Below are positions 38,048-46,900 of a DNA stretch of 64,000 nucleotides, in pieces. The first letter of the stretch is position 1. Each line of letters opens with the position of its first letter. Where the stretch lies: assembly GCA_040357565.1 (NCBI GenBank), contig JBDODJ010000019.1; one strand, written 5' to 3'. Position numbers and translations under genes: made by a program. Under the pieces are notes generated by a model. It did not search any database. It had not been told where the DNA came from and saw only the letters and a list, made by a program, of their open reading frames with translations. The stretch is from Cercozoa sp. M6MM (Eukaryota; Protista; Endomyxa: Ascetosporea).

Positions 38048-40011
38048 TTACATTTCACTCAGGGATCCGTTCTCCTGATCCGCCGATTCAGACGCCGGTG
38101 TCGGCTGCTCTGGCCTCTGTTCGATCCGAACGAGCAAGGACTCGAGCGGCGCGCTGCCGGCCGGCATAACGCGAAACGAATCCGTTCGAACGCCAAGATC
38201 GAGGTGTTTCGGCAAGACCTGTTCGCTGTCGAATACGACGTGCAGCAGACTGGACACAGCGCTCGAGACGAGCTCACCGAGGAAACGGCTGCCCATGAGT
38301 TCACCGGCGGCCGCGGCAAAAAGGCCATTGTCCCGGCTGACGCCCTAGAGAAAAAACAAGAATTAAAAAAAAGGAGCTAAAGAAAAATGGCCTAGTACCA
38401 CAAAGGAATGAATGAGATCGCTGACTTCGACAGGAACCACACCTTCACCATAGACATCATCGCACACACGCAGCAGCACTGTGCAAGTGTCCTGTTCGAC
38501 ACGCGTCGTCACTCGTCGCACGAGCTGCAACAGCATGTCTTGTACCAATGCATGCTCGGCCACGTCACGAGCGCCACCGCGTGCCCACATGTTGAACGTC
38601 GTTTTCACCTCAGTGATACCTACAGTCGACATACAAAGGATGGCATACAAATGATGGAACACACAGGTAACAGTGTCGATGAAAATCACTGGCGTACCAG
38701 AGAGAACAAACACCCACATCAGTGCGTGCAATTCCTGTATCGGTTTCGAGGTCACGACGGCAAGCTGATCCCGCTTAAGTAAGCCGGGCAGCAGGAGCCT
38801 CTGCAGACACGACAGGTCCAGTTGGGCGCTCCGCTGTGACAAGACCGGCGGTATCGCACCGAGCACTTGCGCCAGGTCATGAAGCGAGTAACGCAATCGA
38901 TCCGAGTAGCGGAAGTTGCACCGTGACGAATCGTCGAGGATCCACAGTCTAACAGGCGTCAACTTCACGACACCTGCGCGACCAAAACATAATCTAGAGT
39001 AACACCAACACACAAGAAAATAAACTGGATCCTTGAGTGAACAGCATTATACGCGACACGAGTCGAAGCACGCGCAGCGCACGATCGACGTCAGCTTGCG
39101 AGGCATCGGCACACTGCGACATGATGGCTTTCGACAATTCTGGGAGCGAACTCAACAAGGCGTTAGATCTTCCCTTGCCTTCTTCTGCGCATACCACCTA
39201 ATACCAATGTACTGTGTGTCTCTCCAAAATGTGCAATTCTGCTCTACCAAGAAAGGGCAGTAAATGCGCCCAATCGGACAGCGGTTGCGATCGCACACTT
39301 AAGAGGACTCGCTGGATGTTGATGGTGTCTTCCGTGTACCTCCTCATCACCGCGGCCAGTGAACCTCCGAGAGATAGACGGTGCGCGCACTGGCGACTCA
39401 CAAAGTAGTCAAAGTCAAAGTACTCCACCACCTCGTGCCCCACCAACAGGCCTGCATGCTCGGCCATTATCACAGACACATTTACCGTTTCAGTGTCCAC
39501 GAAAAGACATACTCACGTGCGAAAGGAGCTGTGTTGCGACCGGCCAGGGAGTCATCGCGCGCACAGATTGCCTCCAGCAGGCTCGAGTAGTACATGCGTC
39601 TGTCCTGACCGAGAAGGACTGCCCGCATGTCGTTGAACAAGTCTGCCTTGACACCACAGGAACATGAACGGAGAAATCAAAGAACAAAAGTATAAAAAAA
39701 AACCAGCTACCGCAATAATCTGGTGTCTCCACGCTGAGTGACGGTGTCACAAGCACACACGGCAGCCACTCTTGCACTGGTGCGATGCCACCTCTCCGTC
39801 GCACCATGTCGATGGCACACATCACACGCTTGCGCACAAAAGCCGCCAGTTTGTTCCACACACCACCAACGAACTTTATCGTCGCACAGTCAGTCTCACC
39901 CGATAACGCAAACATACAGGACAAGGTGACTTTTCAATGAACTCCCAACACGTGCTCGATTTCTGTAAACAACTGCACGAATCAGAGAGAGAGAGAGAGA
40001 AAGGGAGATAA

Positions 40012-40063
<52 letters not shown>

Positions 40064-40185
40064 NNNNNNNNNNNNNNNNNNNNNNNNNNNNNNNNNNNNN
40101 NNNNNNNNNNNNNNNNNNNNNNNNNNNNNNNNNNNNNNNNNNNNNNNNNNNNNNNNNNNNNNNNNNNNNNNNNNNNNNNNNNNNN

Positions 40186-40274
<89 letters not shown>

Positions 40275-40284
40275 NNNNNNNNNN

Positions 40285-40336
<52 letters not shown>

Positions 40337-40388
40337 GCACCAAGTTCGGTGACAGTGTGAACTCAAAGTGCATGTCAAATTCCTCCAA
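38048..40388 (-). CDS. Hypothetical protein, multi-exon (5' end uncertain, spans the gap/microsatellite)
   Basis: A chain of coding-like minus-strand segments separated by GT..AG, pyrimidine-rich introns. No motif recognised. Confidence 0.5.
40013..40336. repeat. Long (GT)n microsatellite containing assembly gaps (N at 40064-40185 and 40275-40284)
   Basis: Directly visible. Confidence 0.97.
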
Positions 40389-41205
40389 CCAGTCACAAAA
40401 TCCGGTTCACAAGCATCTGAACGAAAACTAAATTGTATACTTTACCAGGACATGATTTTGAGGATTAAACAACAGTTATACCGGACAAAGGGTCATAAAG
40501 TTGAGCCTCGCACCACAAGAGGTACATTAACGCGTTAGAGATGGCATGCTTCAACTGTTCACACCCAATAGGTATAAATGACGACAGAACGAAAAGCCTA
40601 TATTGATACCTATTGGGTGAAGTTGCCGCTTGTCGAAGTGCGCGCAAAGCGAAGCTCTAACCCAAGCACAACAGGAGACAGCTTGAGAAAGGGGTAAGAT
40701 CAATCGCTGATAGTACTGTAGAGCATGGGTACTGTGATGTCCTTGGAGTGCTCAGTCGATGTCTGCACTTCCAACATGCGATCCGGGCCCTTTTACTGCA
40801 TAACAGCAAAAGGCATCGGGATTCAGTCTATTGAGGGGCGCTCAAGTGGAAGAAGTGAAGGAATTGGGCGCACCAAAAGCTTCTGTTAGCACCGAAATGC
40901 ATGTTTCGACGCCAGGATTTTTCGTGCCCATCTCGCCTCCAATTGTTGTGCACCAAAAAAGGCAACAGAACAATTGTGCAACGCGGTCAATTCTAGTGCG
41001 AGTTGGTAGTTTGTGGTCAGAAGTCTACGGATACAGTACTGGAGCACAGATACAGGAGGATAAAGAGCAATCGTAGTTCGGTTGAACTGATCATTGATGG
41101 GATGATGACTGTGCTGTAGCCAGCAGCCATTACTTTTGTCTTTTCTCCTTCTGGGCTTGAGTTTTAACTTGCGGAAGGTTGACGCGGCAGAAGTTTGAGT
41201 CTAGC

Positions 41206-42222
41206 ATGCCCGACCCTTTCTTGGTACACTCTTCTGGTTTTGTCTGATGATCCGGGATGCTGTTGTTGTGTCGTCGCCAGGGAGAGATCCGGATGTTCGC
41301 CGGCACCTTTGCGCCAAGAGGCTACGCGTTTTGCCATGGACAGCTTCTGGCCATTTCCGAAAACACGGTCTGCGCAGAGTCTTAAAAATAAACTTTGTCT
41401 GTCTCAGAGATGTAGATGTTAAGGTTTGTTCGGTTGTGCAGGCGCTTTTCAGTCTGCTCGGAGCAGCGTACGGAGGAGACGGTCGCACCACGTTTGCTCT
41501 CCCGGACCTGCGCTCCCGTGTTCCTGTTGGCGCAGGGAAAGGACTCGGACTTACTGGTATACTTCCTCTCAATTGTCGAGTGGTGTATGTACAACTATGG
41601 AGAGTCATCAATGCGTGTTGCCTTTGAACAGAGGTAACCCTCGGAGCCAAGTACGGTGTCGAAAAGTCGATCGCGCAAGTGCAGCTCACTTCAAGTCAAA
41701 CCCTGGAATTCGACGTGTCAGCTACTGCGCCGCCCTCCCTGCCGCAGGTCGATGTCGCCACCTCGAGTTCCAACCCGCAAAGTATGTTCTCGTTTTGTCA
41801 CCTTTTCTAGCGCTGTGTGATTTACCTGGTGCATTGGGGAAGCAGGCAGCTTCGCACCCGGTCGCATTCCTCTCCAACCTGAACTACGTTTCACCGACCC
41901 GTACACTTGACATTCAGTTTTTTGCATTGCTTGATTCTTTTTTGCTGCCATCCGACAGTGCTGATGCGGGGGGTACCGAAAAGATGGATATCAACGCGTT
42001 CCTTGGTGCCAATCTGGCAACCACCGGCAGCACCGAGACAGTGCAGGTACGTTCTTCTGTCCTCTGTACCCAAATTAGGTCATCTTGGTTCTTAATTTAC
42101 TACATTTTTAGGTGCCGCTAACAGTGTCGGCACAGAGTGATGTCTCCGTCGACACACACCAGCCCTCTCTCGGCATCTCGTACATCATTGCGCTCCAGGG
42201 CGTTTTCCCTTCGCGTAGCTAA
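41206..42222 (+). CDS. Phage tail-collar domain protein (bacterial MdpB / 'microcystin-dependent protein'-like), 7 exons, about 207 aa
   Basis: Exons 41206-41223, 41281-41367, 41442-41556, 41632-41781, 41846-41900, 41959-42046 and 42112-42222 (624 nt) give MPDPFLGEIRMFAGTFAPRGYAFCHGQLLAISENTALFSLLGAAYGGDGRTTFALPDLRSRVPVGAG...QPSLGISYIIALQGVFPSRS*. Confidence 0.93.
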
Positions 42223-42320
42223 CCGGTGTCACCATTTGCCCATTGCCTGCCTGTCGAGCCTGAACTCTGTGCAGTTCAAACTAAACGAAAGAGAGTTAGT
42301 TTAGTCGAGTCTTGTATGCT

Positions 42321-42847
42321 TGTTACTGTCAACATCAAACAACCTACTCGGCTGACTACATGCTCCGCGTGGAAGCTAAATTCACCAGTCATGCCAAATA
42401 AGAATTGAAGTGTTTTGCTAAGGTCGAGAGCTGGTAGCCTAACAATTGAGTGCTGCCTAGCTTGGCATACCCTGTGTTTGGTAGAGTGGCGAGCAGCTTG
42501 AAACTGCTGCAAGAATTGAATAAAGGCCCTCTTTCCAATACCAGGTACCTCAAGGGATACTGTGCTTGTTGACACCAAGCAATTGACTTGCTCTAGCTTG
42601 AGCAGGGCAAGAGGGTTTTTTTCTTTTGTTCATCATCGAACAAACCTCTCAACACTCTCAACTGTAACGACGGCACTACCTGGGGTAACCTTCTCTCTTC
42701 TGATATCTTTCGGTTTATTGAGACGTCGAACGAACACTAAATTAAACGACCTTACATTCTTACTTCTCTTTAGTCGTTGTATTCACTAAAATTGACAATC
42801 TCACAATCAACATGTTACTGTCAACATCAAACAACCTACTCGGCTGA
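42321..42847. repeat. 35-bp perfect direct repeats (42321-42355 and 42813-42847) flanking a segment of about 457 bp
   Basis: TGTTACTGTCAACATCAAACAACCTACTCGGCTGA occurs twice. Confidence 0.9.
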
Positions 42848-42906
42848 TTACGTAACAGGAACTATTAACGCAACGAAATGAAACAAAAAGAATGGAATCC
42901 GATCGA

Positions 42907-43791
42907 CTAGGGCATGAGCAAATCGTAGTCGTCGAGCTTGTCGTGGTATTTGCGGATATGTCTCTGGATCTTGGAACCATCGACCCAGGTGACGTAGTCC
43001 TCAAGGTCGCGTGTCACCAAAAACGCCGGGTCTGACACGACCTCGGTGCCGACTCGAACGTGGCCTAACACACCCAAGAATACCAAGAAATATTATGTAT
43101 GAACAAAGACAAGGCACCTTGCTGAATGTACGTGGTGGCCTGCTTGATAGACTCGGCCATGTGCAATCGCACCAGCACCACCGGTAAGCGTCGTCGGCAC
43201 ACGGCGGCCACCGTGAGCTTGTCGATCTGCGACAGCGAAGTCGTCGCATTGATCAGACCCATGCGGTGCAGCTTTTCCAGCAACTGCTTTGTCGTACGCA
43301 TTCGGAAGGGATCGCGCGGGTGCAGTTTCGTCAGCATCGCTACGGGTGCAGTAAAGTGCCAGGAATACACAAGGATTTTTTATAGCCTCAATATCGACCC
43401 AACTTTAACTTGATAACAAAAGCGAAAACGAAGAGAAACGATAAGAAAGCAGCAGGAATCTAGTGAAAGTACCGGAAAGCTTGCGAACACGACCGACGAT
43501 ACGGTTGTAACGCACGTATTCCTCGCGCTGGTCTATGCGGTAGCGTCGCATCACTGCGCTTTGCCGCTCGTCGTCGGACGACTTCCATCGCACAAAGTCG
43601 ACCTTCTGCTCACGAACAGGAAAAACATACAACAGAACAGTCAAAGACAAATAACGCAGCATACCTTGAGCAGCTTCTTCTCATGGAATTTCAGTTTCCT
43701 GCACAGAAAAAAGTGATTTTATTGTGGTCCAGATCGAACACAGCGCGAATCTCGATAATCGCCCTCAGAGGCGAGCGCAGTAGTACCTCAT
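42907..43791 (-). CDS. IMP3: U3 snoRNP protein IMP3
   Basis: [76 protein letters not shown]. 5 exons. Confidence 0.96.
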
Positions 43792-43972: not shown

Positions 43973-46900
43973 ATGCTGCACCCGAGCTTTTTGCTTGCGC
44001 TGGATGGTATTTTTGTTTTTTTGTTATACGCTCGTAAGTTGTTACTGTTTTGTTTGCAGACCTGAGGAATGCGAGCTTTCAAACGCGTGATGAGCATGAA
44101 CAAAAGCGGCTGCTGGATGACACATCAAACGCACTGCGTTTGTGCTCGTTGACCGACGTGAGCGTGTTTCGCTTCACTTTCGATCTTGTCGTGAGATTGG
44201 GCTTGGCAACAGCAACAAATTCGGTATCTTTGATTCCGAGGATTTCCATTTTGAGAGTCCATTTTGAAAGCACGTTGAGAGTTCCATTTTGAAAGCACGC
44301 TCTTTGTTGCAGGAAGGAGAAAGACGCTTCGTGAGGACGGAGCCGGTTCGAGTGGCAACGATCCGGCTGCTGCAGGCTTTGTTTGATGCTGCGCAACGTG
44401 GTTCGCTTCTCGTCCAGACATCAAGGCAACTGCAGCGACCGCCCGAAGTGATCGGCGAGTTTCACGATGTTTTGAAGCAACTTGGCGCACCAAAGTTCCG
44501 TGCTTCGCTGGGACACATGATTTTCTTGCTGTTGCGCATCGCTTGTCGCGAAACTGATGATGGTACTCTCTGTCTCAAAGTTTCGCAACGCAAGCGTATA
44601 CTCCTGACGAAAATCACAGTGAAAGCTGATGCGAAATCGACTCAAGTGGCCGCTTTGCGATGTTTGCGCACGACCTTTGAATCGTTGCAGTTCGTGAGCA
44701 GCATTGCTTCCGAGGTCGCCGATGTCGTTGCGCACTGTACTTTGACTCGAATTAAAGTGCCTTCTTGAGAGGTCCGATTTGCTCGACACAGTTCTTCCTG
44801 GCGTGGTTGCACACACTGCAACGATTGCTTCGAAGCGAGATTTGCAATCGTAGCTGATCCCTTTCCAAGCATGGAGCTTTCACATCGTGTGCCTGTGCAG
44901 AGGAAGTGCTGTGTTCGCGGCTGCAGTGTCCTTGTTCGCCCAAGTTACGGTTATGTGCTTTAACGACACCGTGTTGAAGCACGAAGCGCAAGAGAGTGTC
45001 GACAACGCTGATGCTGCGACGAAGCTGCAAAACCTACTTCAGAAACATGAAGCTCAAAGCGAAATCGATAGCGAAATCGATAGCGAAATTGAAAGCAAGC
45101 AATCGAAGCAAGTTTCCGAACACCAAGTTCGCACGGAGCACTGGCAGGCTGAAGCACGAAAGCACGTCGCCAACCTCATTTCGACAGGTGTTTTTGCTCC
45201 GGCAACGGTTTCGTTCGCACGTCGCTCTTCTCGCTTCTGTCTTGCGTTGATCGAAGCTGCGCACCGCTTGCTCACCAAGTGCCGCGACTTCTTTGCCGAA
45301 ACGAGCGAGGCGATGGTGTGTACGCGCACCCGACTCTTGCAGACGGTTCTCACGATGACGCAGCACGAGCTTCCGCAGGTTTCGCAATCAGCCGCTGCAG
45401 TTTCGGCGAGTCTGCGTGCGATGGTCGAAGTCGACAGCGGCTTTCACTCGACGCTCATCGAGCTGCTGCGAAAGCAACTCACTCGTTTGCCGGAACTCCT
45501 CGTGGAAGCTGACTCAACTCGAAAGGTTGCGACGCTCCGTCGTGCGCGTACTCTCTTGGTGCTTTTTCTTTGGACTGTTGGTTTTCGTTTATGTCCCGGG
45601 GTGCTTTACAGTGCTTTCTGGCCGAGTTCAAGAACGAAATGCTCGAGGCGATGCTCTTGTGCGACGAGGTGCTTCTAGCTTTGACAGAGATTGCGCGTGT
45701 GAGCAAGCAGCCGGGTCAAGTGCTCGAGTCGGTAGCTTTGCGCGAAGCTTCGGTCGGAAGCGCGACTGTCCAAAGCAGCGACATTGTCGTGAGTGGCGGC
45801 GAAACGAAAGAGCGCGTGGTCGAGTTCTTCTTGGTGCCACTCGTCGTGTGCGATGACAGTTCCTCGCGCTTCGAGTTGTGCGCTTTGCTCCACAATTTCG
45901 GCGTCGCTTTTGAGTCGAGTGCTTTGAGCGAAAGCGACGAAGCGAATCGAGTGGCGACGTGTGTCATCGGACTCGCAGTGAACGAGATTTGCGATGCGTC
46001 GTCGCAGCTCACTTCGAGCGAGAGTGAAACAACACTCGAGCAGCGTTTGTGTGCGATGCTTTTCGTCGCTTCGAAACTGTGCGTCGCGAGTCGGCAGCAC
46101 GAGTCGGCTGAAGAAGCGATGCGCGAGGTTTTGCTGGGTGTGTTGCCAACTCTGCGAAAGCTTCGGTCGGAACAAGGCGTCGCTTTGGCACTTCGACTGC
46201 TGGCTTCGCTCGCTGCGGGTGCGCCGCGACGTCGCTTGTTTCGCTTCGTGCGCGTGCTTTCTCTCTCTCTTGTTCTGTTTTCTTTCCAAAGTAAGTGTGA
46301 CTATGTGGAACAGTTGAATTTGTTCGAAATGCTCATCTTTGTTGGTTCGCCTGTTCGGCACGTCGCTTTGGCAGCGGTCTCGTCACTCACGCTGCTGGCG
46401 TACTGTGTTTGATTGTTCCGATTGTTTTTGTCTTTTCCGACGCAGTGTGTGCAGTTGGCACTGCCAAGTGGCCTCACTGCCGGCACTGGTGGCACAGTGC
46501 GCCGATGTGCTGGTCGATGACGTCGAACGACAGCTGCGACGCGGAATTCAGCAGCAGCAGGACACTCGAGCTGATACACATGCCTGTGCACGCATGTTGG
46601 ATGCCATTCTCGTTCTAATTAAGGGTGCACTTTCACTTCCCTCTCTATTGTGAAGCATATGAAAGTACACGACTGTTCCGCAGACCAAGAAGAGAGTCGA
46701 CTGGTGCAGTCGATGCTGCCGGCGATGCGTGTGTTGCTGCAGACGCTTGATCTCGCTCTGTCGCCACGCGCACAGCGACAGCTCCTGGCAGACACGGTTG
46801 TTCTCGTTGCACAGGCCACGCGACGTTATGGCTTTGGGTACGTGCTCTTCTCTCCTTATATCATGTGGTATGTGTTATCTCTATCTGCCCATGCGCAGCG

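What the first reader, a model, noticed from the sequence alone, without database searches (positions are those of the whole stretch)
41206..42222. Intact, intron-containing bacterial/phage tail-collar gene in a eukaryotic chromosome
Seen: six GT-AG introns splice to an uninterrupted 207-aa ORF that the ORF track misses. It carries the full stand-alone architecture, from N-terminal PFLGEIRMFAGTFAPRGYAFCHGQLL...ALFSLLG..YGGDGRTTFALPDLR.RVPVG to C-terminal QP.L.I.YIIALQGVFPSR. Established: this is the phage tail-collar (PF07484) / MdpB-type family, which is prokaryotic and forms trimeric tail-fibre-like proteins. Inference: an old horizontal transfer that was domesticated, because it has host-style introns and sits beside IMP3/TTI1, which argues against contamination. 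It has no signal peptide and no phage neighbours. Its role in a protist, for example binding bacterial surfaces or forming a fibre, is not known to me.
Basis: partly seen in the sequence, partly recalled or inferred. Interest (0 to 1): 0.85.

Follow-up and report, generated by a model that had tools for sequence, protein, structure and literature searches.

The report
Intron-bearing tail-collar gene family in an amoeba
A marine amoeba (Lemnamoeba sinaloensis, strain M6MM) carries five intact, intron-filled copies of a bacterial "phage tail-collar" gene, which is a clear case of an old gene transfer kept by selection, although what the protein does in the amoeba is untested.

Summary
Seven exons at 41206-42222 (+), joined by six GT-AG introns of 57-75 nt, give a 207-aa open frame. 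It is identical to the public protein MHM6MM_001350 ("hypothetical protein", Cercozoa sp. M6MM = Lemnamoeba sinaloensis). It has a full Pfam Collar domain (PF07484, E 1e-27) and the stand-alone bacterial MdpB-type layout.

New here:
- The genome holds five intact paralogues (204-208 aa, 53-76% identical). All have the same six introns in the same phases. dN/dS is 0.13-0.35 with saturated dS.
- The five copies form one clade (bootstrap 100) nested among bacterial sequences. The best named bacteria are 38-46% identical and come from many phyla.
- No close relative turned up in viral or metagenome contigs.
- All five copies lack the HxH metal motif that 72 of 80 bacterial relatives keep. They also lack a signal peptide.
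- A homotrimer is predicted: score 0.89, against 0.25 for the best control.

The family is not purely prokaryotic. Virophages carry it, and Plasmodiophora brassicae, another rhizarian, has two secreted Collar proteins listed in a paper's tables. Whether those share this transfer could not be tested.

First readers of this scan had already noted the paralogues on other pieces of this genome.

Verdict: real and moderately interesting, a new variant of a known kind.

The parts
41206..42222 (+). Whole coding span of the tail-collar gene (7 exons, 6 introns; public locus tag MHM6MM_001350)
41206..41223 (+). Exon 1 (18 nt, MPDPFL). The start codon is homologous to the bacterial start, since two bacterial-type relatives begin MPDPFLGEI. 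It is the first ATG after an in-frame stop 15 codons upstream.
41224..41280 (+). Intron 1 (57 nt, GT..AG, phase 0)
41281..41367 (+). Exon 2 (87 nt): first half of the Collar domain, Pfam positions 1-29
41368..41441 (+). Intron 2 (74 nt, GT..AG, phase 0). It splits the Collar domain between profile positions 29 and 30 in all five paralogues.
41442..41556 (+). Exon 3 (115 nt): second half of the Collar domain (Pfam positions 30-57, ending at 41525) plus the GAGKGLGLT linker
41557..41631 (+). Intron 3 (75 nt, GT..AG, phase 1)
41632..41781 (+). Exon 4 (150 nt): start of the middle region. The place of the bacterial HxH motif reads SSQT here.
41782..41845 (+). Intron 4 (64 nt, GT..AG, phase 1)
41846..41900 (+). 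Exon 5 (55 nt): carries the lineage-specific motif F-x-PGRI-x-L, conserved in all five copies
41901..41958 (+). Intron 5 (58 nt, GT..AG, phase 2)
41959..42046 (+). Exon 6 (88 nt): the most variable part among the paralogues (41-43% identity)
42047..42111 (+). Intron 6 (65 nt, GT..AG, phase 0)
42112..42222 (+). Exon 7 (108 nt plus TAA): C-terminal strand with HQPSLGISYIIALQGVFPSRS. In the trimer model it packs against the collar of the neighbouring chain.
43065..43370 (-). Neighbouring IMP3-type ORF (S4 domain). This eukaryotic context is not part of the gene.
44887..45678 (+). Neighbouring TTI1-type ORF (weak match to the TTI1 N-terminal TPR domain). This eukaryotic context is not part of the gene.

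Best explanation
This is one of five nuclear genes of the amoeba Lemnamoeba sinaloensis (Cercozoa sp. M6MM). They descend from a single bacterial-type, stand-alone tail-collar gene (the MdpB or 'phage tail protein' type, about 170-210 aa). An ancestor of the amoeba took the gene up. It then gained six spliceosomal introns, reaching the intron density usual for this host, and was duplicated four times afterwards. All copies have been kept under purifying selection. These steps are shown. It is predicted, not shown, that the product forms an intertwined trimer. In that model the N-terminal collar (residues 7-63) and the C-terminal strand (about 187-207) of neighbouring chains lock together, and the middle 110 residues project as a knob, as in the tips of T4 gp12 and gp37. 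The lineage has lost the HxH metal site and has no signal peptide or membrane anchor. The function is inferred, at about 35% odds. The knob would bind a surface sugar polymer such as bacterial lipopolysaccharide, and the protein would serve a bacteria-eating amoeba as a lectin-like recognition or agglutination factor. It could act inside the cell, or outside after export without a signal peptide.
For: - The gene model is identical to the public protein. The model built here for the C2 paralogue is likewise identical to MHM6MM_000270.
- The Collar domain is complete.
- There are five loci and no more in the 23.6-Mb assembly.
- All 30 introns are GT-AG, at the same positions and phases, and exon lengths are nearly identical.
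- The copies are 53-76% identical. dN/dS is 0.13-0.35 with dS mostly above 1, and every region is below 0.3.
- The five copies form one clade (ultrafast bootstrap 100, SH-aLRT 96) inside bacterial sequences. The sister is an unnamed uninterrupted ORF, P0050 (99/94).
- The best full-length bacterial matches are 44-48% identical. Named genomes match at 38-46%.
- The bacterial relatives looked at sit among ordinary chromosomal genes, not in prophages.
- GC3 is like that of the host genes. The host averages 10 introns per 1182-nt CDS.
- Homotrimer model: score 0.89, best control 0.25; the mark was reached by 21 of 30 proteins solved as pairs of one chain and 0 of 23 solved as single chains; the runs agree in at least 84% of contacts; pLDDT is at least 75.
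- The collar matches T4 gp12 in the PDB, E 9e-5.
- Virophage homologues form a trimer that binds lipopolysaccharide (PMC12724248).
- The amoeba is cultured with bacteria.
Against: - Expression rests on a published annotation that was trained and filtered with transcriptome reads.
- The donor cannot be named.
- The trimer score may come from the model's memory of solved gp12 and gp37 trimers.
- AF2 monomer models were poor (pLDDT 47 and 52), so no fold search was possible.
- Loss of the HxH site and the absence of a signal peptide fit poorly with an extracellular fibre-tip role.
- Nothing here tests sugar binding.
- Plasmodiophora brassicae also has Collar proteins, so the transfer may be much older than this lineage or may have happened more than once.
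Confidence: 0.8

Rival explanations
1. The transfer is far older than Lemnamoeba. A single acquisition early in Rhizaria would be shared with the two secreted Collar proteins of Plasmodiophora brassicae. The M6MM copies would then be a derived branch that lost the signal peptide and the HxH site.
For: P. brassicae has two Collar proteins of 191 and 193 aa, two gene numbers apart (PBRA_005692 and PBRA_005694). Each has a signal peptide followed by a DPFLG- or TPYLG-type start. The M6MM genes already have host-level intron density and saturated dS between copies, so they are old.
Against: The readable part of the P. brassicae sequences keeps the canonical bacterial MPSHSH / MPAHTH motif and shows none of the M6MM-specific motifs (read by eye). 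The search with residues 72-207 found only M6MM proteins among 5.8 billion, though that search needs shared 5-residue words. No tool could take the P. brassicae sequences, so no tree was made.
Confidence: 0.25
2. The gene reached the amoeba through a eukaryotic virus (a virophage, polinton-like virus or giant virus) that integrated into the genome, not directly from a bacterium.
For: Virophages of one aquatic lineage carry three consecutive stand-alone PF07484 genes. Organic Lake virophage and its giant-virus host have them too. Some viral contigs show triplets of full-length copies.
Against: In trees that include 23 copies from viral contigs, none falls near the M6MM clade, whose nearest rows are P0050, P0161 and P0169. 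Most viral matches share only the collar. No virophage or polinton genes flank the gene in the window. The named virophage proteins themselves were not in the tree.
Confidence: 0.12
3. Bacterial contamination or a chimeric assembly: the gene is not really in the amoeba's genome.
For: The culture holds bacteria, and the assembly needed decontamination.
Against: The gene has six spliceosomal introns, and the same six occur in four diverged paralogues on other contigs. It lies mid-contig between IMP3 and TTI1 on a 134-kb contig. Its best bacterial identity is only about 46%.
Confidence: 0.01
4. The copies are decaying relics with no function.
For: They have lost the conserved HxH motif. There is no direct evidence of expression.
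Against: All five copies have open frames, all 30 splice sites are intact, and dN/dS is 0.13-0.35 at saturated dS. New motifs are conserved across the five copies.
Confidence: 0.03

Closest known systems
Bacterial stand-alone tail-collar proteins (annotated 'microcystin-dependent protein MdpB', 'phage tail protein' or 'tail fiber protein'; for example in Nonlabens, Polaribacter, Algibacter, Tenacibaculum, Rheinheimera, Marinicella)
   Same: Same single-domain layout. The collar begins at residue 7 after an M-x-DPF-x-GEI start. Length is about 170-210 aa. The C-terminal motif is QP-x-LG-x-NYIIALQG-x-FPSR. Identity is 44-48% over the full length.
   Different: The M6MM genes have six introns each and lack the HxH motif, which is present in 72 of 80 bacterial relatives. 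None has a signal peptide, whereas many bacterial ones do. They lie on five different contigs, whereas 46 of 80 bacterial loci have 2-6 tandem copies.
T4 short tail fibre gp12 (PDB 1OCY, 1PDI, 5IV5) and the gp37 tip
   Same: The collar domain aligns: residues 6-77 against gp12, E 9e-5. A trimer is predicted in which the C-terminal strand returns to the collar.
   Different: gp12 and gp37 are long virion fibres with metal-binding His motifs. Here there is only the tip module, no His motif and no virion genes nearby.
Virophage tripartite tail proteins (Dishui Lake virophage 2; Organic Lake virophage OLV18/19)
   Same: Short stand-alone PF07484 proteins. They are reported to form a trimer that binds cyanobacterial lipopolysaccharide (PMC12724248; PMC3671162).
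   Different: They are encoded by a virus as three adjacent genes that form a heterotrimer. They were not placed in the tree, and the viral-contig copies that were included are not close to the M6MM clade.
Plasmodiophora brassicae Pb4_109753 / Pb4_109755 (CEO97088.1, CEO97090.1)
   Same: They come from another rhizarian and are 191-193 aa proteins with a Pfam Collar domain near the N-terminus (PMC9530463).
   Different: They have signal peptides and keep the HxH motif. They were listed as candidate secreted effectors. Their relation to the M6MM family is untested, because the sequences could not be given to the tools.

Membership tests
Pfam PF07484 (Phage Tail Collar Domain) | Match to the whole profile above the gathering score | tested here: met
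   P0004 scores 95.8 bits against a cut-off of 24, covers profile positions 1-57 of 57, and has E 1.4e-27. Exons 2 and 3 each pass the cut-off on their own.
Stand-alone MdpB-type tail-collar protein | Collar at the extreme N-terminus of a protein of about 170-210 aa that ends in the QP-x-LG-x-(N/S)YIIA-x-x-G-x-(F/Y)P motif | tested here: met
   Alignments A1 and A3 with 35 and 86 relatives show that P189, I197, G201 and P204 are invariant.
Stand-alone MdpB-type tail-collar protein | HxH motif about 30 residues after the collar (one His is at least 90% conserved in A3; the motif is present in 72 of 80 genome relatives) | tested here: not met
   All five M6MM copies read S-S-x-Q there.
Stand-alone MdpB-type tail-collar protein | Tandem clusters of two or three paralogous genes | tested here: inconclusive
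   46 of 80 bacterial loci have 2-6 copies within 6 kb. The five M6MM copies lie on five contigs, three of them only 5-16 kb long, so adjacency in the real chromosomes is not excluded.
Phage or virophage tail fibre (virion part) | Encoded among virion or tail-assembly genes | tested here: not met
   The neighbours are IMP3- and TTI1-type host genes.
Phage or virophage tail fibre (virion part) | Trimeric assembly | tested here: inconclusive
   Prediction only. The score is 0.89 against a best control of 0.25. The mark was reached by 21 of 30 proteins solved as pairs of one chain and 0 of 23 solved as single chains. The pass may come from memory of solved relatives.
T4 gp12 receptor-binding tip | Metal ion held by His residues on the three-fold axis (from my own knowledge of 1OCY) | tested here: not met
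   There is no HxH motif in any copy. Similarity to gp12 is limited to residues 6-77.
Horizontally acquired gene in a eukaryote | Nested within prokaryotic diversity in a tree | tested here: met
   The M6MM clade (100/96) lies inside bacterial rows. The root is not inferred.
Horizontally acquired gene in a eukaryote | Physically part of the eukaryotic genome (introns, host neighbours) | tested here: met
Horizontally acquired gene in a eukaryote | Patchy or absent in other eukaryotes | tested here: inconclusive
   No close relative was found among 5.8 billion proteins for residues 72-207, or in metagenome contigs. However, P. brassicae has members, and no eukaryotic genome collection could be searched.

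The most novel reading that the evidence does not exclude
The five paralogues assemble into homo- and mixed trimers. Together these would give the amoeba a small combinatorial set of knobs that bind bacterial surfaces, built from a phage-type receptor-binding module. On this reading the module entered Rhizaria once, long ago, and the same stock became secreted host-directed proteins in Plasmodiophora.
Probability: 0.12. Interest if true: 0.75.

Novelty: new variant of a known kind. Interest (0 to 1): 0.45.

Why it matters
The protein fold is best known as the receptor-binding tip of phage tail fibres. Here it has been taken into a eukaryotic nuclear genome, fully intronised, expanded to five copies and kept by selection while losing its metal site. 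That gives a clean, datable example of how a foreign gene is naturalised in an intron-rich protist. It also suggests a testable link between phage-type sugar recognition and how an amoeba handles bacteria. Together with the unremarked Collar proteins of Plasmodiophora, it raises the question of whether this module is an old rhizarian acquisition. It is not a new kind of system, and the public annotation already holds the gene model.

Tried and rejected
No runs were obtained, so read laying could not be used and splice junctions were not checked against reads.
The contigs of P0004, P0050, P0161 and P0169 were therefore not seen.
- The search of protein representatives returned a top-150 list filled with multi-copy Collar proteins. 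It was of no use for finding eukaryotic kin.
- The AF2 monomer models were poor (pLDDT 47 with 36 rows, 52 with 87 rows), so no fold search was run.
- The Atlas searches gave only bacterial or weak viral look-alikes.
- The metagenome scan with M6MM-specific peptide patterns gave only uninterrupted matches at 37-45% identity, or collar-only matches.
It was redone with coordinates only.
- Joined step left out: my own spliced models were never sent to a search tool. Exons were searched by reference. Full-length searches used the public records P0004 and P0381, which earlier searches returned and which scripts showed to be identical to two of the joins. The three paralogue models without a public record (C625, C298, C966) were used only inside local scripts for alignment, dN/dS and trees.
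- The P. brassicae sequences are printed in a paper's supplement but have no reference. They were left out of all tools and only read by eye.
- Rejected readings: contamination, pseudogene and prophage remnant.

Full report
**What is there.** Reading window 40900-42500 and fixing the splice sites by coordinate gives seven exons. They are 41206-41223, 41281-41367, 41442-41556, 41632-41781, 41846-41900, 41959-42046 and 42112-42222. Together they make 624 nt, which is 207 codons plus TAA. All six introns are GT..AG and 57-75 nt long. Exon GC is 59% and intron GC is 35-51%. No single ORF longer than 126 aa in the correct frame covers the gene, which is why an ORF list misses it. Taken alone and by reference, exon 2 matches Pfam Collar (PF07484) positions 1-29 (E 1.2e-10) and exon 3 matches positions 30-57 (E 2.9e-12). 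So an intron splits the domain exactly in the middle.

**Identity of the gene and the organism.** A search with the mechanical ORF that contains exon 3 (scored on that part only) returned a 207-aa NCBI protein. It is named "MAG: hypothetical protein MHM6MM_001350 [Cercozoa sp. M6MM]" and lies on a 134-kb contig. A script showed it to be identical to the join of my seven exons.
- The organism is an amphizoic marine amoeba from fish gills. It was placed in Apofilosa (Rhizaria) and recently named Lemnamoeba sinaloensis.
- The draft assembly is 23.67 Mb, and a chromosome-level assembly of 27 Mb exists (PMC11069148 and PMC13746701).
- Neither paper mentions tail-collar genes, and neither discusses transfer of this gene.
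- The published annotation was trained and filtered with transcriptome reads. That is the only, and indirect, evidence of expression that I have.

**On the joined model.** I searched the spliced model exon by exon, by reference. I did not send my own join to any search tool. All full-length searches used the public record P0004 (and P0381), which the tools returned.

**Context.** Downstream on the minus strand lies an IMP3-type ORF (S4 domain). Beyond it on the plus strand is a TTI1-type ORF (weak TTI1 N-terminal TPR match). There are no phage genes nearby. The ATG at 41206 is the first in frame after a stop 15 codons upstream. The N-terminus has no hydrophobic signal, and no membrane span exists anywhere in the protein. 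The first six residues, MPDPFL, are the same as the start of two bacterial-type relatives. Intron 1 therefore sits inside the ancestral coding sequence.

**A family of five.** A six-frame search of the amoeba's own assembly with the Pfam model, and then with P0004, finds five loci and no more: C19 (this window), C625, C2, C298 and C966. I built models by coordinates only.
- All five are intact, at 204-208 aa.
- Exon lengths are almost the same: 12 or 18, 87, 115, 150-156, 55, 88-91 and 105-111 nt.
- The six introns sit at the same positions and phases in every copy, and all 30 are GT..AG. The intron sequences themselves are unrelated and range from 53 to 238 nt.
- My model for C2 is identical to a second public protein, MHM6MM_000270.
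- Protein identity among the copies is 53-76%.
- Pairwise dN/dS is 0.13-0.35, with dS mostly above 1. The collar, the middle and the C-terminus each stay below 0.3.
- GC3 is 0.56-0.83, like the neighbouring host ORFs at 0.59-0.70.
- Six introns in 624 nt matches the host average of 10 introns per 1182-nt CDS.

So the introns were gained before the duplications, the duplications are old, and every copy is under constraint.

**Where it came from.** Full-length relatives are overwhelmingly bacterial.
- The best single-domain hits are 44-48% identical over 99% of the length. They include Nonlabens, Polaribacter and Algibacter.
- Among one genome per bacterial species, the best are 38-46% identical. 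They are spread over Bacteroidota, Pseudomonadota, Verrucomicrobiota, Acidobacteriota, Chloroflexota and others, and many are marine.
- 46 of these 80 loci hold 2-6 tandem copies.
- Two bacterial loci that I inspected have ordinary chromosomal neighbours: a giant adhesin, an acetyltransferase, Trk potassium transport genes and a T9SS-sorted protein. No phage genes are present.
- In viral contigs, most matches share only the collar as part of longer fibres. A few short contigs hold triplets of stand-alone copies.
- In maximum-likelihood trees the five amoeba copies are one clade: SH-aLRT 96-97 in two quick trees, and ultrafast bootstrap 100 / SH-aLRT 96 in the careful tree. The sister is P0050, an unnamed uninterrupted 213-aa ORF from a public sequencing run (99/94). 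Next come P0161 and P0169 (97/86). All of this lies inside bacterial rows, and no viral-contig copy is near.

**Is it elsewhere in eukaryotes?**
- Residues 72-207 of P0004 found only P0004 and its paralogue among 5.8 billion proteins. That search needs shared 5-residue words.
- A metagenome scan with M6MM-specific peptide patterns found nothing interrupted by introns and nothing above 45% full-length identity.
- The Atlas shows only bacterial clusters.
- The literature search changed the picture. Plasmodiophora brassicae, a distant rhizarian, has two proteins with a Pfam Collar domain, Pb4_109753 (193 aa, CEO97088.1, PBRA_005692) and Pb4_109755 (191 aa, CEO97090.1, PBRA_005694). They were listed among candidate secreted effectors and not discussed further (PMC9530463).
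- Read by eye, the printed parts show a signal peptide, a bacterial-type start and an intact HxH motif. They show none of the M6MM-specific motifs.
Whether they share the amoeba's transfer is open.
- Virophages and their giant-virus hosts also carry stand-alone Collar proteins. In one virophage, three adjacent ones form a heterotrimer that binds cyanobacterial lipopolysaccharide (PMC12724248, PMC3671162).
- The family is therefore not strictly prokaryotic, and a viral route is a live, if weaker, rival.

**What the protein looks like.**
- The Collar domain covers residues 7-63.
- By sequence, the nearest solved structure is the T4 short tail fibre gp12, matched over residues 6-77 only (E 9e-5).
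- Bacterial relatives keep an HxH motif about 30 residues after the collar (72 of 80; one His is at least 90% conserved). All five amoeba copies read S-S-x-Q there.
- In exchange, the five share motifs of their own, such as PATA-x-P-x-(F/L), NP-x-x-x-F-x-PGRI-x-L (exon 5) and HQPSLG.
- AF2 monomer models were poor, with pLDDT 47 and 52. That is expected for an obligate intertwined trimer, and I ran no fold search on them.
- A three-copy prediction passed its controls. The score is 0.89 against a best control of 0.25. The mark was reached by 21 of 30 proteins solved as pairs of one chain and by 0 of 23 solved as single chains. The runs agree in at least 84% of contacts, and pLDDT is at least 75.
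- The tightest contacts in that model are between residues 58-65 of one chain and 189-195 of the next. This is the collar topology of gp12 and gp37.
- The pass may reflect memory of solved relatives. It supports likeness to those trimers, not binding in the cell.

**Most likely working.**
- Shown: a bacterial-type gene that has been naturalised, expanded and constrained.
- Predicted: a trimeric collar-plus-knob protein.
- Inferred, at about one chance in three: the knob binds a surface sugar polymer, most plausibly of the bacteria the amoeba eats, by analogy with gp12, gp37 and the virophage proteins.
- Two features argue that it does not work exactly like the bacterial or phage forms, namely the missing signal peptide and the lost metal site. 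It may act in the cytosol, or reach phagosomes or the surface by another route.

**Verdict.** The gene model is already public as a hypothetical protein. First readers of this scan had also noted the paralogues on other pieces of the same genome. New in this report are the five-copy family with shared introns, the evidence for selection, the single origin inside bacterial diversity, the motif loss, the trimer prediction and the link to Plasmodiophora. I rate it a new variant of a known kind, of moderate interest.

Noticed in passing
window 42321-42359 and 42813-42851: A 39-nt direct repeat (97% identical), 492 bp apart, in the spacer between the tail-collar gene and IMP3. It could mark a small insertion with duplicated ends. 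Another first-stage note (s1-799252) also records it.
   Followed up: partly
window about 39900-40400: A long (CA)n/(TG)n microsatellite with runs of N. This fits the published remark that contigs of this draft break at simple-sequence repeats.
   Followed up: no
L019 5491-7054 (Marinicella sp. W31); L091, L092, L093 (viral contigs): Stand-alone Collar genes often come as three adjacent paralogues in bacteria and on short 'viral' contigs, as in the virophage triplets reported to form heterotrimers. 46 of 80 bacterial loci have 2-6 copies within 6 kb.
   Followed up: partly
window 41846-41900 (exon 5) and the same exon in L002, L003, L004, L008: Exon 5 encodes a motif (F-x-PGRI-x-L ... F-x-D) that is among the best conserved parts of the five copies. 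It falls where bacterial relatives show a gap in the alignment, so it may be a lineage-specific addition.
   Followed up: no
P0001, P0002, P0003, P0005, P0012: Proteins of about 211 aa from metagenomes carry two Collar domains in tandem and no long middle region. This is a different, compact architecture of the family.
   Followed up: no
L002 (G000 C625) upstream of the paralogue's ATG: The frame stays open for 216 codons upstream of the start codon of the C625 copy, whose GC3 is 0.83. This may be chance in GC-rich sequence, or an overlapping or upstream gene.
   Followed up: no
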